Shown: piece after piece, positions 6,190-51,480 of the stretch | How the letters are laid out: the number at the start of each line of letters is the position of its first letter | Numbering within the stretch: position 1 is the first letter of the stretch | Source of the DNA: Rhodosorus marinus CCMP1338 | Lineage: Eukaryota > Plantae > Rhodophyta | DNA: 64,000 bases | Assembly: GCA_029953675.1 (NCBI GenBank) | Contig: JAMWBK010000001.1 | Coordinates: 1,736,001 to 1,800,000 of the forward strand | Direction of reading: 5' to 3' | Notes under the pieces: generated by a model | What the model was told of the DNA's origin: nothing | Database searches by the model: none | What the model saw: only the letters and a program-made list of their open reading frames with translations | Program-made: the position numbers and the translations under genes

Positions 6190-7429
6190 CTACGTAAACC
6201 AGAACGAGACACTGCAGCTAATGTCCAAGCTAACCACGAAGTGCCACCACTTCGGTGGCAGGTAGAGCATTTCTCCAGCGTACAGAACCAGTTTGAACCC
6301 TCTCGCTTGCCGGTAGAGAGGAAATCTGGATTCGTCAGGACGAAGCACGTCCACCTGGCTTGTGTTTCCAAACATCGTGTCCTCCGCGAATGGATACAGG
6401 TTTAGGAATTCCTCCGGTGGAAAGACAACTACGAGCTTGGCTCCAAACACCTATGAAGGGATTAGAGCTTTGGAGTCGGATTTCACGCTATGAATAGAGA
6501 GCTGACGAGACTCGCTAGCGACCTACCTGACATAGTAGGTTGTGATATGGATCATGGTGAAGAGGAGTTTGAGTCCCGGATGGTCCCAGCCACATGTTGA
6601 CAACTGCTTCTGATGAAGAATCCCCTAGGCTTGCAAACTCTGGTTCGATGATATCACTGAGAAGGGAAGGAACTTGTTCAAAGAGCTGGTGCTGTGCTAG
6701 GTATCCCCTGGATTCGCCACGGAGATGTTGCTCCACAAAGTCGCTCATGGGAATCAGCTGAGTTTCGAAGCTAGGATCTGTGTACTTAGAGCCAAGCTCC
6801 ACTGGTACCCATCGATGGCCATACTCAGCTTCCCAAAAGCTAAAGTCGTTCCATTTTCTAAACGCTGGCCATTGCCTAACAACCCCCGAGATGATTTGCG
6901 GACCTTTCCAGAATATACGTGAAACGAACTGCGCAATCGAGGGACGCTCTATTGAAGGTATCCTTTCCACGAGATTTTGAGTTTCCATCTTATGGCCCGC
7001 GATTTCCCGAATTCTCTCATGCCCTAGCAATGCCATCGGCTCGGGATGAACTCGCAAAGCTCCAGAAAGTGTCGCTAACTCGTCAGCAAATGATGAACAT
7101 AAGGACTTGAATGAGGGATGGCCGAGAATCAGCGCTTCATCAAGAAGTCGAACGGAATCAGTCACCGAGGTGCTCTCCCTCAGCGCCAGTTCGACGCTGA
7201 TCGCGCTCAACTTTAACCTCAACCTTGTTTCACATTCATTCCTCTGCCCTTTCTCGTGCAATTGGTTCCATACCTCCCTCCTTGAACTCCAAAGCACCTG
7301 AAGCGGCTTCTTCACCTGAATATCCTCATTCTCTATAAGAACCTCCAGGCGTCGTGCATGCTCCGCGGCGTTCCTTAGGACTTTCACCCCGGAAGCCATT
7401 CCACACGTTTTTAAAGGGGCCTTCACCAT
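6190..7429 (-). CDS. JMJD5: JmjC-domain 2-oxoglutarate oxygenase, JMJD5/KDM8-like, 2 exons
   Basis: VPVELGSKY, YLAQHQLFEQVP.L..DI, WLGPSGTQTPLHHDPYHNLLCQV (HxD) and LYLPPKWWHFV (distal His). Intron 6451-6526 is GT-AG. Confidence 0.88.
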
Positions 7430-22200: not shown

Positions 22201-23705
22201 GAGGGAAGATTGTGGTCTCCTCATCATCCATGTACTTGGTGAAGTCCTTCGCGAACTCCTCTAGCATACGCAAAAGCACAATTTTCTCCACTCCCCGCCC
22301 GTCATCAACGGCTTGCCCTGACGCAAGCATCGCCTTGAGTTTCTGTTGCAGGGCCACCAACGTTTCTCGTGCTTCCGTTGGGTCATCCTTTTCTGGAAGG
22401 CCAGAAACGTTTGTCTTTCCTTCGCTAAGCCGCTGCTGTAGCTCCTTCTTCAAAATCTGCACCTCACCAGCCACTCGGTATGTCAGCATCTTCTCCAAAA
22501 AGGCAAACCTTTCTGCTAGACATTTAAGCTGTGCGTTGTCAAACGGGTCCACGTGTTTTGTGAACTTCAAAAGATCCTACCCAACGAACGTCGAGACAGC
22601 CCGAAACGATGATCGAAACAAAAAAAGTTCATGTAAGCAACCTAGGCGGGCAGTCCAGATAGGTCAATAGCAGCCCCCGAAAAGGAACGAATACAATACG
22701 CTAAGCCTCTCGAGCTCTGTTTTTGCTTCGACTATTGGTTATTCCTTCACAAACGAAAATCCGGGAAACAAGTAAGGAGTGTTTTCAAAGACGTACCGCG
22801 AGCTCAATGCGTATGGCCTTGTTGATGTGGGTAATTTCGACGAGCGGGTTTGACTTGATCTTTGCTGCCTTCTCAAAGGCAGGGAACACATTGCACAGGT
22901 CCGACCATTCCGACGCTGAAAGATCATGTGCAATGCTAGAGGCGATCTCAGCCAGCTGGTCTTCCGTGCTGTACTTTTCAATTAACCCCAAAAAGTCAAT
23001 GCGTTCTCCTTTTGACAGAGCTCTAACAGTCCAGGTCAAGACCGGTGTGGCAAACATCACGGCGAGCATACCAACTAGCAGCTTGCCTTGCTCTGCTTCG
23101 CTGAAAATATCATTGAACAGGGGTAACAGGACTTTCTCCTCCTCGTCTAGATGCACATTGACGCAATCAATCAGCTGAGATAGCTTTTCCTGCTTGAGGT
23201 CCCGGATCGTCCCCTCCCAATCTGTCTCGGATTTTTTCGGACTGCCAATCTCTTTTTGTAGAGTTCGCAATGCCTCAGTTATCTGATCGAAATACTCTTC
23301 CATATCTTTGTGCTTGTGTTTTAGCACGCTGATGTAATGCTTCGCTGAGGGGTTCGATTTCTCCTTAGACTCCTCAAGCTTCACCATTAGGGCTGGACAA
23401 AGAACAGACTCCTCGGACTTGCAGTGCTTGTCCATCATGCTTTTCAAATAGCTAATACGGGCCAAAATTCCGCCATAGAACTGCGCCGTCGAGCTCACGC
23501 TCACGTCCGAAATCGTTCTCCGGAGCAACTCTAAATTTCGTCTGATCGCCTTGTGGACGTTGAACATCTCTGCCAAGGGCTCAATCTGTGTCGAATTCTG
23601 CGCGGCATCGCCATTTTCAAATCCATCCTCGATTATCTTGAGGCGCTTTTGAGCTGGCCCTTCTCTGTCCAGCTCAACGTTCTGGGTACGCCCCACAAAC
23701 TCCAT
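19281..23705 (-). CDS. BTS: BRUTUS/HRZ-like E3 ubiquitin ligase: three hemerythrin domains, CHY zinc finger, CTCHY, RING and zinc ribbon; many exons
   Basis: Hemerythrin motifs HKAIR..HCKSEE..HLDEEE and HKAIR..HSDE..HLTQEE. CHY: GCKHYQRRCKVRAKCCGKLFTCRLCHD. CTCHY: YHCHSCNVCRVGKGLGIDFFHC. RING: CPIC..CGHLMHKHC..CPVC. Ribbon: CNDC..HFLYLRCSFCQSHNT. Confidence 0.92.
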
Positions 23706-27211: not shown

Positions 27212-29232
27212 ATGCAGCCGAGGGAGTTCTTAACTACTCAGGAAGAAGTTGACCTGAAGGTTGATGGAGAGAAAATATGTAGCCAGATCTATAGGTCCGA
27301 GTATAGGGATCACATGGAGGGAACACCGCTAGGTGACTTCTTGGCGGACTTTGTGGAGCTGCAGAACGACCCGACAGCGGCCTATCGCGCTTTTCATGTG
27401 TTGGCATGCCTTGGCTCAGTTCATGGGCGTTTCCGTCAGCGGTTCTTGCAGACCGTTTCAGGGGCAGACCTTGTGATGATGGTTGTGAAGCATGTTGAGG
27501 ACAAGCTCGTTCAGAGAAAGGCGATGTACTTCATTTCTGTCCTGGCCATGGAAGAGGATAATCGAATATTACTCATTGAAGCCAATATTGTCCAAGCGCT
27601 AGGTGAAGTAGTGACGAAACTGTATGATTCTGATGACGTCCTCCAACGAGCAGGCATAGCCTTCTCGAACCTCAGCATCGTCCCTTTCGAGAAGAAGGTT
27701 GCGATTGGTCAGGAGGGAGGAATTCGGATCATCAAGGAGGTGATTTCCAGGCCGGACATTAACGTCGCAACACTTATGGCATGTCTAGTGACTCTAAGAA
27801 ACGTCACCGTCGCATGCCATGAGAACATGCTGATTTGCAGGGACGAGAATATGCCTGAAATAGTCTTCAATATCATGATAAGCCGTAAGCACAATCTTGG
27901 TGTGCAGGGACAGGCTGTGGTTGTCATGACCTACTTAACAAAGCAAGACGATGAGCTTCGGGAAAGAATCGGAAAGTCACCGGAGAAATTGGAGGCGTTT
28001 GTGAACCTGATAAAAGCTTCGGGTAGGTCCCAAAGTGTCGCGGAGCATACGCTGGAACTGCTGAAGGTTCTTCTTGACAAGAACGATAGTGCGACTGAAA
28101 TTGTACGCAAGAACAACCTTATTGAGATTATTCAGGAAAGATTTGACGGTAAGTCTTATAGCAAGTATCAGTGCATCTTACCTTCGTCTTATCATGGATG
28201 ATGATGATCCTCGTGAGGCTTCCCGAGGAGTGGTTTGACACTTACAAGCATCTCTATTTCTTTTCCGCTTTTTCTACTTTAGCCTTCAGCTCATCCGCAA
28301 AGTTCGTCGAGAATGCCTGCGCCGTGTTGCGCGCGCTCGGGTTTCTAAATGAGCCTCGGGACATGATGCGAGAGCTGGGAATTTTTGAGAGACTGATTTC
28401 GAGCCTAAGGCACTACGACTCAAACGTGAATGTTGTAGAGCAATGTCTGTGTGCAATATCGAACGCATGCGTGGACAATCCTAAGAATCAGGAGAGCCTT
28501 GGGATGCGGGGTGCAGTAGAGGCCACAATTCATGTGATGGAAATGCACAGAGAGAATCCATTGCTGCAGGATTACGGATGCAGAGCGCTCAGAAATCTCG
28601 CCGACAATTGCGAGTTCAACGTGCGGATTGAGGGAGAGAACGGTGGAATCAATGCGGCCACGTTTGCGATATTGGGTTTCCCCAGGAACGCTGTACTCAC
28701 GGAACAGGCTTGTGCTGTACTGAGCAACATGGCCCAATCCGAGCAAAATGCGATACGAATGTTACAGCAGGATGTGCAGGACATAGTGACCCAGGCATTG
28801 CAGGTGAGATAATCCACTTTTCTATTCGCGCAATGAAATTGGTATCAGCCGTTGCCGGTGGAGGCTCTACCTCACCAAATGTTGCATGCCGCAAATAATA
28901 GACTAACCAAAAAAAAAATCCTCATCATCTTCTGTGTTTTTCAGTCAATTGACAGCGAGGATGCGCAGAAACAGGCAACCAGGGTTCTGTTGGCGTTGAA
29001 AACGCACGTGGATAGAGCGGAGTTGGCCTCTCAGGGACGGGATTCTGCTGCAGGGAAGAACATGGGACACGTTCCGTCTGGTATATATCGGTTCCGATCT
29101 GGGCAGGCGGTTGTTAGCCGTAGGACTGTGAACCGACGGATGGGTAGGATGAGATTGAAAAGTATGCAGCGCCAGGAGGTGAAGTCGAATGACACTGTCG
29201 ACCCGGGGGGAGCGGGGCAGAGCCTCACCTGA
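27212..29232 (+). CDS. Armadillo-repeat protein, 3 exons
   Basis: Repeated ARM units (AGIAFSNL, CLVTLRNV, CLCAISNAC, GCRALRNLA, ACAVLSNMA; GGI..I motifs). Introns 28149-28282 and 28804-28943 keep frame. Confidence 0.85.
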
Positions 29233-41405: not shown

Positions 41406-43070
41406 TTACTTGAAGAAACTCGTGAGCAGCTGTTGCTCAAGCTTTCCGCGCTTCCGCGAGCGGCCAACGAATTTATGCTTGTGTACATTCCCTTCGTCCC
41501 CACTGGGCTTCAGCGATAGCTCAGGTTTTCGCTGTGGACTGGCATCCACGCTTTTAGGCAACACTCCGCTAACCTCATCGATACATCCGGGGTTCTGCCC
41601 AGCTCTCTGTGAATCGGTTCGTCTTACGCTGCCATCACTCATAAAGATCCCGAAAACCTCGACTGCGTCAGTCTCGAGACTCTCTCCAGGAGTAGTTTTG
41701 GAGAGCTCAGGATCTCCGTATAGCTCGTCATTCACATTGCGGCTTGTCCGTTTCTGTTCACCACTCTCGGACTCTGTCTGTTTTCTGCTTCTAGGACTGC
41801 TCATCGTTCCCAAGAAGTCGGTCCGGCCACTCTCTATGGTGTCACAAGCTCTGTCGGAGTAATCACGGCTACCACTGACATCGTTCTTCAACTCTGGGCG
41901 GTTCCGCTTTTGACTGGCAATCTCAGATTCTTTTCGTTTTCCGCCGGAAGGGCTACCGAACTTGCCGAAAAACTCAACCATGGCCGCTCTCTCATCGATC
42001 AAGCCTTTGAAACTTGACAACAGGGCAGTATTTTTGGCAACAGTATCCTCCCCAACCGTTGGTACAACTCTCTTCGGTCGTAGGAATCCCACCCATTCGA
42101 GTAGCTCAGAGTAGGACGAGTGTTCACTATAAGGCACTCCGTAGATCTTGAAGCAGCCCTTCTCCTGAACGCTCACTGTGCCTTTCACGTTCCAGCTCCA
42201 ACCAGTGGGTACAAATCCAACCACTCGTTTGAAATAGGAATCCTTACGATACATGTCTCGTCGCCGGAGGTTCTCAGTCTTCATGATCGCTTCCATCTTC
42301 TCATAGTTTGGCTTGAATCCCCAAGGAACAGATTGTATGAACGCCTCCCACGGGGTTACATGGACAAACGTCTCCGAGACGTTCGTCGTGAATACTCGTT
42401 CATAATAGTCAAGTTCCAGGAGACTCAAAATGCTAGCTTTGGTGTCAGTGATACCGATCTTACACCCCAGTCTTCTCGACAGGGCTTCTAGTACCCTTTC
42501 CTTACCGATGAGGTATGTGGAAATGAGGAACAGTACCGGTTCTCCTCCAGCGACTTCCCCCTCCGCAAGCGAAACCAACGTTTCAATCGCTTGGTCTTGT
42601 GCGGGGAAGACATACTTCTTGTTGCAGTAGGTCGTGTCCAAATACACTGCATCGAACTGATTATCAGAGCCAAGCTGCTCGAAGAGTTTCATTTTGGGGT
42701 GGTATCGCATGTCACCCGTGTGAAGATATCTTTTCCCATCAACGGTTTCGAAAAGGAACTGAACAGATCCAGGACAGTGATTGGCGTCCAGAAGCGTCAC
42801 GTTCAAACCCACCTCTTCCTTGATCGCTGTTCTAGTACTCATTGGAAGCGCAACAACATATTGCTCGCCGACTCCCATATGTCCTATAAGCAGACGAGCA
42901 GTAATCTCCGACGCATAGATAGGCTTCCCCTTCCATCGATGAGTAAGGCCTCCATAGTGGTCGGCATGGAAGTGCGTGAGGAAGAGAGCTTCCACCCACG
43001 ATCGAATTGGAGGGCGAAACCAATCCACCAATATCTTGGTTCCAGGAACTCGGTTTCGTTCTTTAACCAT
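41406..43070 (-). CDS. SNM1: DNA cross-link repair nuclease SNM1/PSO2 family (metallo-beta-lactamase/beta-CASP), intronless
   Basis: FLTHFHADHYGGL, DANHCPGS, LHTGDMR, YLDTTYC, IGKER, FVPTGWS and VPYSEHSSYSEL. Disordered C-terminal tail. Confidence 0.93.
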   Translation of the reverse strand: MVKERNRVPGTKILVDWFRPPIRSWVEALFLTHFHADHYGGLTHRWKGKPIYASEITARLLIGHMGVGEQYVVALPMSTRTAIKEEVGLNVTLLDANHCPGSVQFLFETVDGKRYLHTGDMRYHPKMKLFEQLGSDNQFDAVYLDTTYCNKKYVFPAQDQAIETLVSLAEGEVAGGEPVLFLISTYLIGKERVLEALSRRLGCKIGITDTKASILSLLELDYYERVFTTNVSETFVHVTPWEAFIQSVPWGFKPNYEKMEAIMKTENLRRRDMYRKDSYFKRVVGFVPTGWSWNVKGTVSVQEKGCFKIYGVPYSEHSSYSELLEWVGFLRPKRVVPTVGEDTVAKNTALLSSFKGLIDERAAMVEFFGKFGSPSGGKRKESEIASQKRNRPELKNDVSGSRDYSDRACDTIESGRTDFLGTMSSPRSRKQTESESGEQKRTSRNVNDELYGDPELSKTTPGESLETDAVEVFGIFMSDGSVRRTDSQRAGQNPGCIDEVSGVLPKSVDASPQRKPELSLKPSGDEGNVHKHKFVGRSRKRGKLEQQLLTSFFK

Positions 43071-44488
43071 TCCCAACCACCACAAGAAGTGTCCAAGCGA
43101 ACAAGATCAGACACCACACCAACTAAACACAATTGTCATAGCCAGACATTTCCTTCTTACTGTTTTTCTTCATTCAGATAGCTTCCAACCTCGGCGTCAT
43201 CCGAAACAAAACCATTGGTCCAACCCTACTTAGCATTTCTCTTGTTCAAATCTCAAAAGGCCTCTCCTTGAATACAAGACCGACGCTCCACCTTCTCACT
43301 AGAAAGACCTCAAGAAACAAGCACAAAAGGCCCGACGATGCTCAGTAAACGAATCCATGCTGGCCTTTGAAGACGATACCACTTTACATTGCTAAACGAG
43401 GAAGATGCCAAGCACAAAGCGGACTGGAAGTATCCGTACAAGAGTAACTTTTTTTTTTTGCAAAAGGATTTCTCTAGTTGCCTCATTTGACTGTTGTTTG
43501 TTCGAATGAGCTGTTGAAAGGTTAGTGAGAAACCCACGGCCTGAGTCTGTTCAAGAGAACGAAGCACGACTGGTGTTCGTACTTTCGAGCATTAGTTATT
43601 GCATTCAACTGATCCAAGAAGCCCTTTGAAGATGATACGGAGTCTACCGGAACTTCATCTGGTCGACGGAAGATATCCACTGAACGTGAACTCTTGGAAG
43701 TCACTCTGGTCAGGATATTTATCATTCATCGATGCACCAGTTCCATTGGAGGGGTTCATGAACTTCCTACAGTCCGCGTTCGTCAGAGAGTCGTCTTTTG
43801 GTAGCTCGACGGCCATCCATGTATAGAGAGAACCAGGCTGTCCTTCTGGAATCAAGCATACTACTGCTCTCGGGCATTTGCCTAAGTAGAAATACATGAT
43901 CTCTTCAACGCTGATCCTTTGATGGCTCAATCCAAACCACCGTCCTCGAAGTCGAATAGACTACCAGCACAGTCATAATCCTAGAGGCGCGGTGACTCGA
44001 GCCTATTCACCAGGTTTGAGGCTACGGACTGCTTTTGCGTTCAGGTGAGTGCCAAAAACAATGTTTGGGGCTTTACTCTCTCCTGGAATTTGAATCACAT
44101 CTGAGCTCGTCTGCTAAATGTACTCTAAGCAGACGGATGTCTACGTGGTGGGTCAAGGCGCAACCAGTCCCACTCTTCAGTACTCGACTATCGCTTTAGA
44201 ATTTTAGAAAACCCCAGACACCTGTCCGCATCTTTCGCAAGCGGTTGGAAACCTTGGCCGCGCGTCACCTTATCAGTGCGTCGTTGCAAGGATGTTGAAA
44301 CGCTCACGGTGAGAACAATCTTTCAGGACGAATCCGCAAACAGAAACACTCTTCGCTTCATTCGAGCATTCGATACCAGAGGCATAATCCTTCTTGTCAC
44401 AACCTCAACGGGAAATTTGACCCCTGCTAGTCCAGACTGAACTCCGCATTCAACCTCTGCCTAATGGAATCGGTTCAAGAATCGTTGA

Positions 44489-46116
44489 CTACTTGGTGAT
44501 GGTTGCGTCGATTGCATTAAGCAATTCCGTTTTCAGCTCGGGCGAAATTCCTCTTTCCTGCGTTTGGTCGTAGATTCTCTCAAACGCGCGAACTTTGATG
44601 GAAGGCGGGATGAAGTTGGACACAAGCAGGAGTCCAATGGCAGCCCCGCCCATGTCTCCACATCGAAGGGCGATGTACACATCGGAAGATATTGTTCCGG
44701 TTCCTTCTCTCATAGTAGCAAACAGAGTCTCTACGTAGTGCTCATCTCCGGTGCATGAATACATAAACAAGTTCGACGCCGCTCGGACGAGAGATTTCGG
44801 ATGGTCCAAACAGGCCCTGACTTCCTCAATTAGCTCGAAAAGCTTCAGATTATTTGCCGTCAAAATTAAAGTAGGAAGCGGCTCTGATGTGTTATCTCCA
44901 TACTTGTAGCCATCCACATCTGATATGAGCGTCTCCTTTCTCGCTCGAATGATCGCCTGCAGTGTAGAGAAGCGTTACCGTCACCAACCTAATTGAAGAT
45001 CGAACCCTCTGACTCTTTTCGTGAAGGCCATACCTTCAACTTTTCTGCGACTTCCGGTTCGAGGTGATCAAACTCGAAGATGTCCGTTTGACTTGCTTGT
45101 CCCTCGTCAATTTTCTGCAAGCGCAAAGCCGATTTCACAATTTTCTCCTTGACGACATCCAATACGTACTGAGGAACGCCCTCTGGTCCGCGGTTTCTCT
45201 CCGCAATCAATCCAAGAGAATGAAGCGCGTTTTCGCGAAGGAAGAAATCCTCTTCCTGTATGCATTCTCCAAGAGCCCTCATCGTAGCCTCCTTTACAGG
45301 CTTTACTTGTGCGACTTTGCCAAGAGCCATGACCGTTCTCTTTCTCAGCTTGTACACTAAAAATTGAGAGGGTGAGTGGAAGATTTCTTTTAAGACGAGG
45401 AAAACTGTCAGAATTGTGAAAGCTGGGGCTGCTTGCTTACTCTCCTCGGTCCGTATATTCGTACTCAAAAGCGATTCCACCAGCGGTTGCTCGGCCTCAA
45501 ATACAGAGAATCTACGTACCCACCATGCAGCAAAGTATCTGGCAGCGACAACTTCGTGGTTCTTCAGATTGTATATTGCCTCTTCCTTAGATCTTGGACA
45601 GTAATCTTCATGTAATTCCGGATCATATTCAAATTTGTCACCTAAATCGGACCCGCTTTCGAATACACCTGCTATGAAAGCTTCATCTGACATCTGAATC
45701 TCCAGTTCCAGTGGATCCATTCCTTCGAACATAAATTTCTTAGCCTTCTGAGTCATGAGAGCTTCATGTGCCTCGAGGCCCTCAAATCCAAGCTTGTCGT
45801 AAACTTTACGCAGAGTGTCGTCAGTCAGCACACTGTATGCTTTTGTGATGGCATCGAATTTCTCCGTCTCCTGGACCGTCTGTACTCCTCCCTCAACGGA
45901 ATCTGGGTGCAAGTCCCTTGCCAGCTTCAAATAAGCATTTCTAATTTGCTTATAAGATGCATCCGCCCCGTCCCCAACTCCCAACGTTGCATACAAATCC
46001 TCCCGAGCGCTCATCCGCAACTTTCTCCCTCGGCGCTCACAGACGCGACTACCTTCAGGTCCTCTCGAGGAACACCCAGTCCTCAGTCCAGACGTGAACG
46101 CCAAGAACCCGTCCAT
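44489..46116 (-). CDS. Plastid-targeted J-domain (DnaJ) fused to CpcE-like phycocyanobilin lyase HEAT repeats, 3 exons
   Basis: MDGFLAFTSG presequence. J-domain LYATLGV..LARDLHPD..AYSVL. Then EEAIYNL..ARYFAAWWVRRF, YKLRKRTVMALGK, EDFFLRENA and, after intron 44959-45033, TGDEHY. In-frame intron 45357-45440. Confidence 0.82.
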
Positions 46117-47607
46117 CCTAACAAGTCAATCACAACTCTCCCAGACCCCAGGCACAGAGAACGACAGAAAGAAAGAAGCTACGATACCTCGAATCCGTCT
46201 AGAACCACCCCTCTCTCCAAATTAGACAAGTACAGAATCCAAGGAACGCCTTTCACAGACACCGACAATCAGACTCTCAACCATTTCGATCGTCCCCAAA
46301 AACAATCAAACAACCCTCAGCAACAGTTCAAGAACCAAAACTACTACCAGCCCCAATGAAGTCCAGGACCATTACCAAATGTCCTAGCTTTCAACGCTTC
46401 CTACTCTCACAAGTCCAAACTCGCCTTCCATATATGGTCTTTACCCAAATCCATCCACGGTTCCCCAACTGACTCCAACAAGTCTTAAACGTCCTCGAGA
46501 TCACGTCGATCTCATATCCTACTTTTTTAAATGTTTTTTCTACTCCGATTGATTGTGTGGTTTGGGACAAATCTAAATGGGACATTTTTGTCCCACTTAG
46601 AAGACGGCTGTGATTTGTTTAGTAAAAACAGTACGGCGTTAGTACGTATTCGTCTTATTTTAAATAAAAATGCTCTTTTTCATTTTATCCTTTTTGGTTA
46701 TTTTAGAATCTTAGGATCTCAAGTTCTTGAATGGGGAGTCCAATTGCAACACGGGGGTGCCTAGATGAAAGTACCGCTTCTAATCCAACAAGCTAAGTGC
46801 TAATTCTAGAGGTCCATACCCGCTTTAGCTGTTCTTCATGCAACCGCCTCACCAATCCAAAGAAGGACGAGAGCGAAAACAAATGCTGCCAATTCACAGG
46901 CGCTTCGTGCATCGACCTAGGGTATGAACCGAGTACCATGAGTTTCCTGGATCTATGATGATCGTTTACAGCTGCAGCTTACAATCATGCTTGCAAAAGA
47001 ACGATTTCTACTTCGATCTAATAGGTACCAGTGCAGCAATGTCAGGGACGCGGATTCAAATCCGGGTCCTTCGGTTGACAGGCACAGGCGGTAGCAAGCG
47101 GAATCAATTCAATCCATTAAATTTTCATCCCTTTCGGGACTCCTTCATTGGATGTTTCTCCTTCTCATTCGAGCCGTGGCCCTCTAACGTGCAGAATTCA
47201 CACTGAGCTTTTATTCTCATGCGCTTCCATTCCGTCTCGCTAACTTTCTGGGGTAATGCGCTGCCTTGTAGCTTGCAGTTGAAAGTCCTTCACGGCATGA
47301 TGCTTCCCATCCGGTATTGTGGTCTTCAGGCATCATCGTCGATAATCCGTACGTAACTGGCAGCTGACCATCGCCGATCCTCCCGACAACCTTTTTCAGC
47401 GCAACCATTTCTTTGCTTGTATAACGGAAGAGGAGTAGCGCACGTTCTCAACGAGGAAGACGGGCGAGAATGAATGTAGCAGTTGGTTCACGAATTGAGT
47501 GACTGGAAAGCGGTGTCTGAAATTTGGAAAATCAGAACGTATTCTATGGAAGATTGAGTCTCAGGACCTCCAAGTTTTGGGGTTAGTGCGGCATCGCATC
47601 AAGAATC

Positions 47608-49724
47608 GTGGCTCGAATCTCGGAAAAGGAGCGGGCGTTTCTAACCCCGTGGAGGTTGCTGATTGCTATTGGATTAGTGCAATGCCAGCCTAAATACTTC
47701 CACCTACTGCGACCATTCTTACTTCAGGCCGATGAGGCCTCACAAGTGGTCAGCAGATATGACAAGCTTGTTGAGCATGCCGAACGTCTGCAGCTTGGGG
47801 AAAGGACGTTTGCCGATTACATTATCATGGGCGCAGGGTCGTACTTTCTCAATGTGGATAGTCTGATGGGGTCTGTCGAATCTCTGTTCTGGAGTTTTGT
47901 TGCGGAAACGTACGAGGGCTTAGACGGTACCAGTTTGGTTTATCAATATGTGCGGCGGGTGGTTGTGATCTTCGACGCTATCCAGTTCGAGGGCGTTTGC
48001 GCCTTGTATGATGAAACAGTCAACTACATCAACGCTGACTTTGAAACGCACGTGGAACTACCGAAAATCCAAAGCCGACCATCCTTACAGCAGCAACTAA
48101 AAGATCTCCCCGAGGAAAACTTCACCGATGCTGAGGACGCTGTTCACCGCTGCTTTGACCTCTCCCTCGTGCACGTTAAAAAGAGCCGCACCGGGTCACC
48201 AGCCGAGTTCGCTTCAGGTGTTCACTATGCTCCACTCTCGCTCGCGGCAGTGCAGCACAAATTCGGACATAAATCCGAAGCGGAGGCCGCGCTTGGTGAA
48301 GCAGTAAATATAGCTCAGCAGATCGGTAACCAAGAATTCCAGTCCCTGGTAGCCCCATGGCTTGCGGAAATACACGACGATTGGAGGTTTTTGGAAACGA
48401 GGGGAACCAACTATGAAGCGGAACTCGAGCTCGCCAGAAAAGAGGTTGAAACCTTGGGGCTGGGTAAGCCCTCAGACGAACGGCTTTGTAGAATACGGAA
48501 GCACGTTGCGAAGGCGACCGCCCTGGCAAATAGTTCAGATCAGGCTGCTGTCCCTGGGTTTCTTCTTCTCGCCGGTGCTTGGCTGCTGGAGGGCGGGAGG
48601 TCCGTGGCATATTCCTACGCACAGCTCGCTCTTCGCCGATCGAGCCACTTGGATGGTAGCCTCCATGCTAATGCTTTCTGCGCTGTACAGTCGCTACGTT
48701 TCGATGAGGGGTATCCTGAGGAGGCCTTGGACGCGCTCTTCGACCAAGCGAAGAACGCGGACAGTGGTTCTGTTCTAGTCCGAACGACTCTGAAGCTCTC
48801 GATCGAACTGGCACTCGCAAAGGGTGAGATTCGAGTAGCGGAGGCGCTCTTGAGCAGAGCGTCGGGGCTGGATGATAAGGATAACGATTGCGCTGCTCTT
48901 CTTGCAAGTGCAGAGTGCTGCCTCGCCAAGGGAGATTTGTTCGAAGCAAACAGATTGGCTGAGGAACTGGTGCTTGAAGCTGCACAGAGACGTACGTATA
49001 ACACAACATCGAGCAACACGTGTCTATTGTCTGCAAATTTAATATACATTCAAAGTCTTTGTGTTCATGGAAGGCCCCGCCTTCCACAAGTCGGTGGGGG
49101 GCGCTTGCTGGTTTACCGTTATCGTAGCGTTTGCTCAGCGTCTTTCTCTCCCTCCATCATTTATATGTAGGGCTGTGTCCTTTCGTTGTGGAGGCCTACC
49201 TGATCCAGGCGCAATCCCACCTCAAAGCACAATCTGTGTCCTCGGCCCTTGCTCCGGTTCTCTCCGCTCTGTCGTTTGCAAACTCTTTACGATGGCAGCC
49301 ACAGCGATGCAGGGCTGTAGGAATGCTGGCAAAAATTCATTTGTTCCTCGGTCAACGAAATGAGGCTTTGTTGAAAATGCGACAGATAACTCCCGTCGCA
49401 CTCAACGCGCTCCCCTGTCGGCATAGAGGGGAGCACTACCTCATTCACGCCATGTGCATGGCCGAGTGCGATGGCCAAGCTTATGAAGAAATTGTGGCTG
49501 AGCTCGAGAGAGCACGGACGAACTTTGAAAAGGCCTCATGCCTTACAGGCTTTCTGGAAACAGAGATCCTCGCGGCGAAGACGGCGGATCGGTTTTCGAA
49601 GCAGAAGGAGCGAGATCAAGCCGCCAGGGAAGCCCGAAGCATTGCCAAGAGGATTGGGGCAGCCGCGCGAAAGCTGCCAAAGGCAGAACTTGGCCGGCTG
49701 CTAGCTCTGGCTGCAATGAACTAG
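47608..49724 (+). CDS. APC5: Anaphase-promoting complex subunit 5, 2 exons
   Basis: N-terminal LTPWRL, VHRCFD and YAPLSLAAVQHKFGH.SEAEAALGEAVNIAQ (Apc5 domain), then TPR-like helices. Intron 48992-49170 keeps frame. Confidence 0.85.
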
Positions 49725-49861: not shown

Positions 49862-51480
49862 TCAAAAAGAGAAGTCTTCAGCGCCAGGAACCCGCTTTTC
49901 TTCACCGAGAGCATCCTTTTCCTCTGTCTCCCTCTCATCTGGGGATTCTAGCGCGAGTTCACCGAGCAGACCCGAGCGAAAATCGGTGAGAAACCGTCGC
50001 GCGAAGCGCTCCGTGTCTGATGCGAACGACTTGTCTGCCACTGCAAACTAGCGGGATGCAGAAGAAAATTGTCACGCTTTAGACTAGTCCGGGCGATGCC
50101 TGCTCAAGGTTTCGTACGCGGGAATGAGATTCTTATACTAATAGCAGGACACTTACCAAGTACTCATCACCAGCCATCTCCCCGAATTGGACACCGTAGC
50201 GGTTCTGGGAGCGATGAAAAAAGCAAAAAGAATATCGCAGACGTTCAGATCATGCGGCATAGAGAACAGTAGAAGCATAACCTTTCGTAAAGAACTTGAA
50301 CAGAGGGACCAACAGCAAAACGCAAAGCTGCGAGTGGACCATTCCTTTTCCAAATAGCCGAATCTTGTTGAAAGCAAAACAACCCCGTTATCAAGAACAT
50401 CCAGCTTACCTCAATCCTTTCCATGTCTACAAAACCGTTGATTCTTGTGGACACGGATCTTAATTCCTCTGCGAGAAACGCCTAAAGCACGAATGCATAG
50501 GGCTGGAAGTTCAGATAACAATTGAGGAGGTTGGGAACCAGCAAAACCCACTGGGATGCTGTACGTACAGCTACTAGCTGGTTGTCATAAGAGGCCTCTC
50601 CGATATCATCGCATACAGCAAGCCGGCTAGCAGTAAGTTGACTAACGAGCTTCATTGGTATGATACCCGGTGTGTCGAGCAGCTCAATATCGCTAGAGAT
50701 CCGAACCCACTGCAATCCTCTCGTGACTCCGGGACGATTCTCAGATTTTGCAGCTCGTTTGTTGACTAGTCTATTGATCAGAGCGGATTTCCCTACGTTC
50801 GGATACCCGAGCACCATGCATCTGACGGGGCGAGGCAGCAGGCCACGTTTCTTGCGCTTCTCGTTCATGGCAGTGCCAGCTTGCAACGCCGCACGTCGAA
50901 GCTGAGGTACGCCTTCCCCTTTTTGAGCGTTTGTGAAAAACACGCTGAAACCGCTGTCCGACAAATGCCGTTTCCACATCACCTTTGCCTTTTCAGGAGC
51001 CATGTCGGACCTGTTCATGGCCACGATGCAGGGTTTGTTGCCCACCCTGCGTAGCCGTGCAGAAACAAGGGGAAAAGGTGAGCACAGACGGTTAACTCCA
51101 GCCGCAAAAGACACTGAGGAGGCTCTTCCGCCAATACGCCATTAGACGAATCTAAGAAATCAGTTGGTGCTAGTACGAACGTACCACTTTTCTACGAGGG
51201 GGTGCGCAGTTGATCTTGGGATTCTGCAGTCACGCATCTCAATGACGACATCAACTACCGACAACATCTCCTTCAGCTTTTTCTCAGCCTTTGCAATATG
51301 TCCGGGGTACCAGTTTATCAAAGGACGAACTAGCCCTTCCTCAGGCAGTTTATCCCTCCCTTTCGCCATCGCAATCACTTCTGGACGAACTCGTCGATAA
51401 CCGCATCTCGAACCAACCCGCGCGTTCGACGAAAACGCATTCACCTGTCCAGCCGACACAAACAATAACATCGTATTCAT
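49862..51480 (-). CDS. RbgA: Ribosome biogenesis GTPase RbgA/YlqF, organelle-targeted (probably plastid), multi-exon
   Basis: [46 protein letters not shown] and LLDTPG. The last exons give [17 protein letters not shown]. Confidence 0.92.

What the first reader, a model, noticed from the sequence alone, without database searches (positions are those of the whole stretch)
44489..46116. DnaJ J-domain fused to a full CpcE-like phycobilin lyase
Seen: transit peptide, J-domain with intact HPD, acidic linker, then a HEAT region after two introns are removed. Knowledge (recalled): cyanobacterial CpcE begins DQAIANLQQ..ARYYAAWWIGRF and continues YPLRRNAAKALGK, EDYYVRESAA and LTGDNRY. The window has EEAIYNLKN..ARYFAAWWVRRF, YKLRKRTVMALGK, EDFFLRENA and CTGDEHY, colinear to the C-terminus. 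In cyanobacteria CpcE is a stand-alone subunit that pairs with CpcF. Inference: the fusion may couple stromal Hsp70/DnaK handling of plastid-made apo-phycocyanin directly to chromophore attachment, a chaperone-lyase module I do not recognise as described.
Basis: partly seen in the sequence, partly recalled or inferred. Interest (0 to 1): 0.8.

Follow-up and report, generated by a model that had tools for sequence, protein, structure and literature searches.

The report
Red-algal CpcE lyase carrying a J-domain
A nuclear gene of a Rhodosorus-like red alga encodes one protein that joins an Hsp70-recruiting J-domain to a CpcE-type phycocyanin pigment-attachment subunit; the fusion is real, occurs in every named red-algal lineage that turned up, and I found no paper on it, which suggests that pigment attachment in red algae is tied to an ATP-driven chaperone.

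Summary
On the minus strand, 46116 to 44489, three exons separated by GT..AG introns of 84 and 77 nt encode a 488-aa protein. It has a basic N-terminal presequence, a J-domain with HPD, an acidic linker and a CpcE-like HEAT solenoid. Two Rhodosorus mRNAs (488 and 491 aa) carry the same continuous reading frame, so this is one gene. dN/dS against one of them is 0.12.

The solenoid matches CpcE best by profile, by solved-structure sequence and by predicted fold (5N3U chain A, TM 0.79).

The fusion is not peculiar to this window. At least 55 J-domain plus CpcE-like proteins turned up. The named ones come from Porphyridium, Galdieria, a Cyanidioschyzon-like alga, Pyropia and Gracilariales. Some are single uninterrupted ORFs, and all separate as one group from stand-alone cyanobacterial CpcE. 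Databases call them "phycocyanobilin lyase subunit alpha" or "J domain-containing protein". I found no paper that describes the fusion.

The Rhodosorus copy is an outlier. Its J-domain keeps 16 of 16 family-conserved residues, but the C-terminal half of the solenoid keeps only 14 of 50.

The proposed function, Hsp70 recruitment to apo-phycocyanin and the lyase, is inferred and not shown. I could not find a CpcF partner for Rhodosorus.

The parts
44489..46116 (-). Whole coding region (ATG at 46116 to stop codon 44489-44491), three exons, 488 aa
   Evidence: Colinear with transcripts P0001 and P0002.
45441..46116 (-). Exon 1 (676 nt; residues 1-225 plus the first base of codon 226)
   Evidence: transcript position 1011 maps to window 45441.
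45357..45440 (-). Intron 1, 84 nt, GTAAGC...TTTTTAG; in frame and free of stop codons
   Evidence: Absent from transcript L002 and from P0001/P0002.
45034..45356 (-). Exon 2 (323 nt; residues 226-333)
   Evidence: 94% nucleotide identity to the transcript, no gaps.
44957..45033 (-). Intron 2, 77 nt, GTATGG...CTGCAG; contains in-frame stop codons
44489..44956 (-). Exon 3 (residues 334-488 plus the stop codon)
46009..46116 (-). Presequence, residues 1-36. It has 8 basic, 3 acidic and 7 Ser/Thr residues, with Phe at positions 4 and 7. This looks like a plastid transit peptide.
   Evidence: Composition. Modelled as disordered, pLDDT below 50. Least constrained part of the gene, dN/dS 0.27. The targeting role is inferred from what is known of red-algal transit peptides.
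45796..45999 (-). J-domain, residues 40-107
   Evidence: Pfam PF00226, 56.5 bits. Many solved J-domains match. Helices are modelled with pLDDT above 90. 16 of 16 family-conserved residues are kept. dN/dS 0.045.
45901..45909 (-). HPD tripeptide (CAC CCA GAT), residues 70-72
   Evidence: HPD is present in all 48 family members whose gene model includes the J-domain.
45601..45726 (-). Acidic linker, residues 131-172 (14 acidic, 1 basic), ending in the family motif D-x-C-P-R-S
   Evidence: Low pLDDT. The motif is conserved across the fusions.
45178..45600 (-). N-terminal half of the CpcE-like solenoid, residues 173-285 (spans intron 1). Contains ARYFAAWW and LRKRTVMALGK.
   Evidence: Aligns to CpcE residues 18-123 of 5n3u_A and to NCBIfam CpcE profile positions 4-104. 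25 of 40 family-conserved residues are kept.
44840..45177 (-). Family-specific insert, residues 286-372 (spans intron 2). Two extra helices, with the motif F-x-F-D-x-L-x-P-E-V-x-x-K-L.
   Evidence: The insert is present in all the fusions and absent from cyanobacterial CpcE. Helices 288-308 and 326-343. 8 of 28 family-conserved residues are kept.
44492..44839 (-). C-terminal half of the CpcE-like solenoid, residues 373-488; strongly diverged
   Evidence: Weak second match to CpcE residues 162-227. pLDDT about 90. Only 14 of 50 family-conserved residues are kept, against 42-48 in other lineages. dN/dS 0.11.

Best explanation
This is the Rhodosorus member of a red-algal gene family. In that family the cyanobacterium-derived E subunit of the phycocyanin alpha-Cys84 phycocyanobilin lyase (CpcE) has moved to the nucleus and gained three things: a plastid presequence, an N-terminal class-C J-domain, and an extra stretch of roughly 50 residues inside the solenoid.

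Shown: the gene model, the single mRNA, the domain identities, the CpcE fold, the spread of the fusion across red algae, and purifying selection on every domain.

Inferred mechanism: after import, the HEAT solenoid does what E subunits do. It holds the apo-biliprotein in an attachment-competent state, normally alongside CpcF. The HPD J-domain docks plastid Hsp70/DnaK in its ATP state and triggers hydrolysis. Unfolded or newly made apo-phycocyanin alpha is then clamped and released next to the lyase. A role that is chaperone-like but ATP-independent in cyanobacteria would thus become coupled to ATP.

In the Rhodosorus lineage the J-domain is fully conserved, but the insert and the C-terminal half of the solenoid have been remodelled. 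The surface for the partner or substrate, and possibly the lyase role itself, has therefore changed, while the link to Hsp70 has been kept.
For: Gene and mRNA.

J-domain above the Pfam cut-off, with HPD. HPD is present in 48 of 48 family members that include the domain.

CpcE is the best family, the best solved sequence and the best fold.

The best stand-alone relatives are cyanobacterial CpcE, with a Gloeomargaritales protein first.

At least 55 fusions were found. All named ones are from red algae, some annotated as CpcE. Single uninterrupted ORFs occur in L001 and in Porphyridium L008.

In the tree, the fusions and cyanobacterial CpcE fall on opposite sides of one branch, SH-aLRT 99.

The shared insert and the D-x-C-P-R-S motif tie the window protein to the family.

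A CpcF-like gene lies next to the fusion in the Cyanidioschyzon-like locus L001. CpcF homologues exist in Galdieria, Porphyra and Pyropia.

dN/dS is 0.12 overall and 0.045 in the J-domain.

A review reports that E subunits bind the apoprotein and act in a chaperone-like, ATP-independent way (PMC2327270).
Against: Nothing here is biochemical. Plastid targeting is inferred from composition only.

The CpcE profile score of 75.5 bits is far below the 330-bit equivalog cut-off.

Only 23 of the 47 positions conserved in both the canonical fusions and cyanobacterial CpcE are kept, and only 14 of 50 family-conserved positions in the C-terminal half. The very long branch means the protein's position inside the family is unresolved.

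No CpcF was found in the window, or for Rhodosorus, by two searches. Both searches depend on short exact words or patterns, so this is inconclusive.

A J-domain identifies Hsp70 as a partner. It does not identify the client.
Confidence: 0.6

Rival explanations
1. The Rhodosorus copy no longer takes part in bilin attachment. It survives as a client-specific Hsp70 adaptor: a CpeZ-like, purely chaperone-type E/F protein that holds phycobiliprotein subunits for folding or assembly.
For: The J-domain keeps 16 of 16 conserved residues, while the insert keeps 8 of 28 and the C-terminal half 14 of 50. Other red-algal lineages keep 42-48 of about 50 in the C-terminal half. The branch is very long. No CpcF was found for Rhodosorus. 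The gene is still under purifying selection.
Against: The N-terminal CpcE signature is retained, and the CpcE fold is predicted with high confidence. No other CpcE candidate from the Rhodosorus transcriptome samples appeared in the profile search, although that search did recover a canonical fusion from another transcriptome sample of the same series. From general knowledge, phycocyanin alpha-84 normally needs an E/F lyase.
Confidence: 0.2
2. The family works in the opposite direction. Like NblB, and like the known reverse reaction of CpcE/F, it uses Hsp70 to pull phycocyanin out of rods and detach bilin during phycobilisome turnover or nutrient stress.
For: NblB is a CpcE homologue with no attaching activity, and CpcE/F-type proteins have been discussed in bilin detachment (PMC2327270). 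Hsp70 with a J-protein is a classic disassembly machine (general knowledge). Two family members show faint NblB profile matches.
Against: The window protein has no NblB match at all, and CpcE scores far higher than NblB in every member. The one genomic neighbour that could be checked is CpcF, the lyase partner. These proteins are the only CpcE-type candidates that turned up for red algae.
Confidence: 0.12
3. J-CpcE together with CpcF is the missing red-algal activity that converts phycoerythrobilin to phycocyanobilin, acting as a lyase-isomerase or an isomerase.
For: Most red algae lack PcyA. An unidentified activity above 60 kDa isomerises PEB to PCB, and a lyase-isomerase was raised as one possibility (PMC13193486). 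E/F-type lyase-isomerases exist (MpeQ appears; PecE/F is cited).
Against: The same paper reports that C. merolae, which has PcyA, and G. sulphuraria, which needs the isomerase, have similar sets of lyases. The fusion plus CpcF is also present in the Cyanidioschyzon-like locus L001. In known cases the isomerase determinants lie in the F subunit (recalled, not tested). The measured activity acts on free bilin.
Confidence: 0.05
4. It is an artefact: two neighbouring genes, a pseudogene, or a chance HEAT-like ORF.
For: The gene model needs two introns to be removed. One of them is in frame and free of stops, so a naive ORF call gives a different protein.
Against: Two independent transcripts carry the continuous 488/491-aa ORF, and the transcript-to-genome alignment has gaps exactly at the introns. 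dN/dS is 0.12. Intron-free orthologues have the same architecture.
Confidence: 0.02

Closest known systems
CpcE, the E subunit of the heterodimeric CpcE/F phycocyanin alpha-Cys84 phycocyanobilin lyase (Nostoc PCC 7120 structure 5N3U; NCBIfam NF058502)
   Same: It is the best profile, sequence and fold match. The N-terminal signature (RY[YF]AAWW, LR[RK]R..ALG, D..[LV]R) is retained. The two are colinear to the C-terminus. In other red algae a CpcF gene accompanies the fusion.
   Different: This protein carries a presequence, a J-domain and an acidic linker at its N-terminus. About 89 residues sit where Nostoc CpcE has about 38. It scores 75.5 bits against a 330-bit cut-off. Half of the universally conserved positions are replaced, mostly in the C-terminal half. 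It is nuclear and contains introns.
Red-algal J-domain-CpcE fusions already in databases (e.g. Porphyridium purpureum KAA8493632.1, Galdieria yellowstonensis KAK4524078.1, and entries from Gracilariopsis chorda, Gracilaria domingensis, Galdieria sulphuraria and Pyropia vietnamensis)
   Same: They share the architecture, HPD, the D-x-C-P-R-S junction motif and the solenoid insert, and they fall on the same side of the tree.
   Different: The window protein is about 30% identical to them, while they are 38-57% identical to one another. It lacks their EHHYSQRVLIRDLG and PMVENSFKILAL motifs.
CpeZ and the isolated PecE subunit: E/F-type proteins with a chaperone-like role
   Same: They are HEAT-type E/F proteins whose main reported job is to hold the apoprotein or chromophore in a productive conformation (PMC10254012; PMC2327270).
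   Different: Those act without ATP and have no J-domain. Here a J-domain implies recruitment of Hsp70.
HscB/Jac1, a class-C J-protein dedicated to one client in a cofactor-delivery pathway (analogy from general knowledge)
   Same: A J-domain is joined to a client-specific binding domain, so that Hsp70 ATP hydrolysis is spent on one cofactor-insertion pathway.
   Different: The client domain, cofactor and partner are unrelated. The HscB profile matches only weakly, and only through the J-domain.
NblB, a CpcE-like HEAT protein needed for phycobilisome degradation
   Same: It belongs to the same HEAT_PBS superfamily and has a role related to phycocyanin.
   Different: The window protein has no NblB profile match. 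NblB has no J-domain.

Membership tests
J-domain proteins (Hsp40), class C | J-domain profile match above the curated threshold | tested here: met
   PF00226 scores 56.5 bits against 27.8, residues 40-107. Dozens of solved J-domains match.
J-domain proteins (Hsp40), class C | HPD tripeptide in the loop between helices II and III | tested here: met
   HPD at residues 70-72, window 45901-45909. Present in 48 of 48 family members that include the domain.
J-domain proteins (Hsp40), class C | Helical J fold | tested here: met
   The model has helices 41-45, 55-69, 81-98 and 100-109, with pLDDT above 90.
J-domain proteins (Hsp40), class C | No G/F-rich region, zinc finger or DnaJ C-terminal domains (this separates class C from classes A and B) | tested here: met
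   No such Pfam hits. Matches to the DnaJ equivalog models stop within roughly their first 130 positions.
J-domain proteins (Hsp40), class C | Stimulates Hsp70 ATPase | not testable with these tools
   Needs a biochemical assay with plastid DnaK/Hsp70.
CpcE (NCBIfam NF058502 equivalog) | Score at or above the curated cut-off of 330 bits | tested here: not met
   75.5 bits, in two stretches. The ten relatives scanned score 79-160 bits, also below the cut-off.
CpcE (NCBIfam NF058502 equivalog) | CpcE is the closest family among E/F-type proteins | tested here: met
   CpcE E 4.5e-21 against CpeY 0.0086, with no NblB or CpcF hit. Best solved sequence is 5n3u_A. The best stand-alone relatives are cyanobacterial CpcE/RpcE.
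CpcE (NCBIfam NF058502 equivalog) | All-helical HEAT solenoid that superimposes on CpcE | tested here: met
   Foldseek best hit is 5n3u_A, E 5e-8, TM 0.79 normalised to the target. The next hits are artificial alphaRep proteins at E 1e-4 or worse. The model was built with CpcE sequences in its alignment, so it is not fully independent.
CpcE (NCBIfam NF058502 equivalog) | Conserved positions of the C-terminal half | tested here: not met
   14 of 50 family-conserved columns are kept. 23 of 47 columns shared with cyanobacterial CpcE are kept.
CpcE (NCBIfam NF058502 equivalog) | A CpcF partner in the same organism | tested here: inconclusive
   None in the window. None attributable to Rhodosorus in a protein search or a metagenome scan. 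Present next to the fusion in L001 and elsewhere in other red algae.
CpcE (NCBIfam NF058502 equivalog) | Attaches PCB to CpcA Cys84 together with CpcF | not testable with these tools
   Needs reconstitution.
Red-algal J-CpcE fusion clade (unnamed) | Architecture: presequence, J-domain, acidic linker with D-x-C-P-R-S, CpcE-like solenoid | tested here: met
Red-algal J-CpcE fusion clade (unnamed) | Solenoid insert with the F-x-[LF]-D-x-L-x-P-E-V motif | tested here: met
   The window has IFEFDHLEPEVAEKLK. The insert is absent from cyanobacterial CpcE.
Red-algal J-CpcE fusion clade (unnamed) | C-terminal motifs EHHYSQRVLIRDLG and PMVENSFKILAL | tested here: not met
   Replaced by TGTISSDVYIALRCGDMG and NFIPPSIKVRAF.
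Red-algal J-CpcE fusion clade (unnamed) | Falls with the fusions, not with cyanobacterial CpcE, in a tree | tested here: met
   One split, SH-aLRT 99. The tool warns of a long branch, so the position inside the clade is unresolved.
NblB (NF045915) | Profile match | tested here: not met
   No hit at E up to 1.
Single-chain E/F lyase-isomerases (MpeQ type) | Fold and length of a fused E+F solenoid | tested here: not met
   7mc4_A scores only E 3.5e-3, TM 0.48. The solenoid here is the length of CpcE alone plus the insert.

The most novel reading that the evidence does not exclude
The J-CpcE/CpcF pair of red algae is an Hsp70-powered lyase that also supplies the long-sought conversion of phycoerythrobilin to phycocyanobilin. 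On this reading the fusion would mark the missing enzyme of red-algal phycocyanobilin supply. A heterodimer of mature J-CpcE (my estimate, about 50 kDa) and CpcF (about 25 kDa) would fall in the reported size fraction above 60 kDa.
Probability: 0.05. Interest if true: 0.85.

Novelty: new variant of a known kind. Interest (0 to 1): 0.55.

Why it matters
Bilin lyases of the E/F type are described as ATP-independent, chaperone-like enzymes, and almost everything known about them comes from cyanobacteria. If every red-algal CpcE carries a functional J-domain, then maturation of plastid-encoded phycocyanin in red algae is probably wired to the Hsp70 cycle. That would be a concrete and testable link between nuclear control, plastid proteostasis and antenna biogenesis.

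It also bears on heterologous production of red-algal phycobiliproteins, because a missing Hsp70 partner could limit yield.

The Rhodosorus outlier offers a natural experiment. Its J-domain is intact while its solenoid is remodelled, which may show which half of the protein is indispensable.

Tried and rejected
1. Is L001 (GCA_041825655.1) a glaucophyte, which would push the fusion back to early Archaeplastida? Rejected. Its CpcF-like neighbour is 81% identical to a Cyanidiococcus yangmingshanensis protein, and its GC content and lack of introns fit Cyanidioschyzon-type red algae. The plastid GAPDH comparison with solved structures did not decide the question.

2. Is a CpcF gene present in the window? 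tblastn found nothing.

3. Does Rhodosorus have a CpcF? A protein search seeded with the L001 CpcF and a metagenome/transcriptome scan with a red-algal CpcF alignment returned nothing from the two Rhodosorus samples (3300017118 and 3300016967). Both methods need shared short words or patterns, so this is inconclusive.

4. Is CpcE-CpcF adjacency general? No. CpcF is not a neighbour in Porphyridium or Galdieria.

5. Is there a second, canonical J-CpcE in Rhodosorus? None appeared in the profile search, which did recover a canonical fusion from another transcriptome sample. This is negative but not exhaustive.

6. Do cyanobacteria have the fusion? None was seen. Every cluster member of the stand-alone-length hits that carries an organism name is a cyanobacterial protein without a J-domain, and the long non-fusion hits are multi-HEAT proteins matching single repeats.

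7. Literature. Seven full-text searches and several papers were checked. None describes a J-domain on CpcE. The CpcE/F structure paper (PMC5740638) is not held, so interface and catalytic residues could not be checked against the text.
Full report
**What is in the sequence**

The minus strand between 46116 and 44489 carries a three-exon gene.
- Exon 1 is 46116-45441.
- Intron 1 is 45440-45357. It is 84 nt, GTAAGC...TTTTTAG, in frame and free of stop codons. That is why the mechanical ORF list gives a 375-aa read-through product.
- Exon 2 is 45356-45034.
- Intron 2 is 45033-44957, 77 nt, GTATGG...CTGCAG.
- Exon 3 is 44956-44489, including the stop codon.

The spliced product is 488 aa. I used the spliced sequence only in tools that accept typed letters. 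For the restricted tools I used the public transcript product P0001.

**Is the fusion real?**

A search with the solenoid part returned two full-length proteins. P0001 is 488 aa, from a transcriptome, and 93-94% identical. P0002 is 491 aa and named Rhodosorus marinus A0A7S0BRH4, a "J domain-containing protein", 82% identical. Both align across the two exon junctions without indels.

The transcript contig that encodes P0001 (L002) aligns to the window in three blocks. The gaps between the blocks are exactly the two introns. The alignment runs from 46395 to 44223, so the untranslated regions are covered as well.

Between the window and that transcript, dS is 0.29 and dN is 0.036, so dN/dS is 0.12. 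By region, dN/dS is 0.27 for the presequence, 0.045 for the J-domain, 0.14 for the N-terminal solenoid, 0.14 for the insert and 0.11 for the C-terminal solenoid.

This is therefore one expressed gene under purifying selection throughout. It is not two genes and not a pseudogene. The neighbours are ordinary eukaryotic nuclear genes: an SNM1-type DRMBL nuclease, APC5, a GTPase and an armadillo-repeat protein. The window is nuclear DNA of a Rhodosorus-like red alga.

**Domain identities**

- Residues 1-36 are basic and rich in hydroxylated residues (8 K/R, 3 D/E, 7 S/T), with Phe at positions 4 and 7. The model treats them as disordered. This fits the Phe-containing transit peptides known from red algae. 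That is an inference, not a test.
- Residues 40-107 are a J-domain. Pfam DnaJ scores 56.5 bits against a cut-off of 27.8, and many solved J-domains match. HPD is at residues 70-72, window 45901-45909. There is no G/F region, zinc finger or DnaJ C-terminal domain, so this is a class-C J-protein.
- Residues 131-172 form an acidic linker with 14 D/E and 1 K/R.
- Residues 173-488 are a HEAT solenoid. Its best family is CpcE (NF058502, E 4.5e-21, 75.5 bits, two stretches). Its best solved sequence is the CpcE chain of the Nostoc CpcE/F lyase (5n3u_A).
- An AlphaFold2 model of P0001, built on an 87-sequence alignment, has mean pLDDT 82.8, above 90 over most of the solenoid. Its best Foldseek match is again 5n3u_A, at E 5e-8 and target-normalised TM 0.79. 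The next hits are artificial alphaRep proteins at E 1e-4 or worse. The alignment included CpcE sequences, so this is supportive rather than independent.

**The fusion is a red-algal family**

An exhaustive HMMER search with the solenoid alone found, as best hits after the query's own protein (P0001), proteins of 414-706 aa in which the match sits in the C-terminal two-thirds. Eight of the ten examined have a Pfam DnaJ domain at the N-terminus. The other two are gene calls that lack most of it. All ten score best to CpcE, at 79-160 bits.

Cluster look-ups and a profile search named members from the following:
- Porphyridium purpureum (KAA8493632.1, annotated "Phycocyanobilin lyase subunit alpha")
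- Galdieria yellowstonensis, G. partita and G. sulphuraria
- Gracilariopsis chorda, Agarophyton chilense and Gracilaria domingensis (the last annotated as the CpcE subunit)
- Pyropia vietnamensis

In total at least 55 distinct fusions were recovered. Most come from unnamed assemblies.

In L001, and in the Porphyridium locus L008, the fusion is a single uninterrupted ORF. The architecture therefore does not depend on any splice prediction. L001 comes from a Cyanidioschyzon/Cyanidiococcus-like alga, because its CpcF-like neighbour is 81% identical to a Cyanidiococcus protein.

HPD is present in all 48 members whose gene model includes the J-domain.

The best stand-alone relatives are cyanobacterial CpcE/RpcE. 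A Gloeomargaritales protein comes first.

In a maximum-likelihood tree of the solenoid, the 57 fusions and the 30 cyanobacterial CpcE fall on opposite sides of one branch, SH-aLRT 99.

The family shares derived characters that cyanobacterial CpcE lacks. One is a D-A-C-P-R-S motif where the linker meets the solenoid. The other is an extra stretch inside the solenoid that carries F-D-L-D-x-L-x-P-E-V-x-x-K-L.

All this points to a single ancient fusion in the red-algal lineage after the gene moved to the nucleus.

**Partner gene**

In L001 a 304-aa gene lies convergently next to the fusion. It scores 111.6 bits to the CpcF model. A published table gives consecutive accession numbers for C. merolae CpcE and CpcF (PMC13193486 supplement), which fits that arrangement.

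CpcF homologues also exist in Galdieria, Porphyra and Pyropia. They are not adjacent to the fusion in Porphyridium or Galdieria.

The window contains no CpcF, and I could not recover a Rhodosorus CpcF. Given the methods, that result is inconclusive.

**The Rhodosorus copy is an outlier**

It is about 30% identical to the other fusions. They are 38-57% identical to one another. It sits on a branch of roughly 7 substitutions per site, and the tool flags its placement inside the family as unsafe.

I counted the columns that are at least 85% conserved among the 55 other fusions. The window protein keeps:
- 16 of 16 in the J-domain
- 25 of 40 in the N-terminal solenoid
- 8 of 28 in the insert
- 14 of 50 in the C-terminal solenoid

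Six other lineages, each left out in turn, keep 42-48 of about 50 in the C-terminal solenoid. These controls include the deep-branching Cyanidiophyceae.

Of 47 columns conserved in both the fusions and cyanobacterial CpcE, the window keeps 23. The family motifs EHHYSQRVLIRDLG and PMVENSFKILAL are replaced.

Even so, the region folds confidently in the model and evolves under constraint. The link to Hsp70 has been kept intact, while the surface for the partner or substrate has been rebuilt. I cannot say whether this reflects co-evolution with a diverged CpcF, a change of substrate, or loss of the lyase role.

No second, canonical copy from the Rhodosorus samples appeared in the profile search, which did pick up a canonical fusion from another transcriptome sample.

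**How it most likely works**

[quoted passage not shown] They also report that an E/F-type protein, CpeZ, acts mainly as a chaperone for another lyase (PMC10254012).

A class-C J-protein is, by established knowledge, an adaptor that brings Hsp70 to a particular client or site and triggers ATP hydrolysis through HPD. Red-algal plastid genomes encode a DnaK (recalled, not tested here).

The simplest reading is that the red-algal E subunit recruits plastid Hsp70 to apo-phycocyanin alpha at the lyase. Folding or holding of the client is then coupled to bilin attachment.

Shown: architecture, conservation, fold and constraint. Inferred: plastid location, Hsp70 recruitment, the identity of the client, and lyase activity.

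The rival readings are these:
- a pure Hsp70 adaptor that has lost lyase function, specifically in Rhodosorus
- an NblB-like role in disassembly or bilin detachment
- a role in the unexplained PEB-to-PCB conversion of red algae (PMC13193486)

The last is disfavoured because the Cyanidioschyzon-type lineage, which has PcyA, keeps the same gene pair.

**Novelty**

The proteins are in public databases, some named CpcE and some named only for the J-domain. Seven full-text searches and the papers I read turned up no description or test of the fusion.

I rate it a new variant of a known kind: an E/F-type lyase subunit with a built-in Hsp70 co-chaperone domain. The window holds its most divergent known member.

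Noticed in passing
window 45357-45440: Intron 1 is 84 nt, a multiple of three, and has no in-frame stop. If it were retained, 28 residues would be inserted into the first part of the solenoid without breaking the reading frame. The two public transcripts both lack it.
   Followed up: partly
L001 1036-2598: A contig from a Cyanidioschyzon/Cyanidiococcus-like red alga encodes a 520-aa coiled-coil protein with a strong SAS-6_N match (91 bits). This is unexpected for a group usually described as lacking centrioles.
   Followed up: partly
L001 6679-9526: In this Cyanidiophyceae-like locus the J-CpcE gene and a CpcF-like gene lie as convergent neighbours. The pairing is lost in Porphyridium (L008), in Galdieria (L010) and in the window.
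   Followed up: yes
window 41406-43085 (-), 47608-49170 (+), 50482-51114 (-): The flanking genes are an SNM1/DRMBL-type metallo-beta-lactamase nuclease, an APC5-like protein and an MMR_HSR1-type GTPase. None is related to phycobilisomes.
   Followed up: partly
window 22785-23705 (-), 6515-7429 (-), 27212-28812 (+): Other ORFs with domain hits are a hemerythrin HHE-domain protein, a cupin-8 (JmjC-like) protein, and an armadillo-repeat protein split across two adjacent ORFs, which probably means an intron or a frame change.
   Followed up: no
window 45766-46359 (+): A 197-aa ORF lies antisense to exon 1 and the 5' untranslated region of the gene. I did not search it for homologues. It is most likely a by-product of the coding strand's composition.
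   Followed up: no
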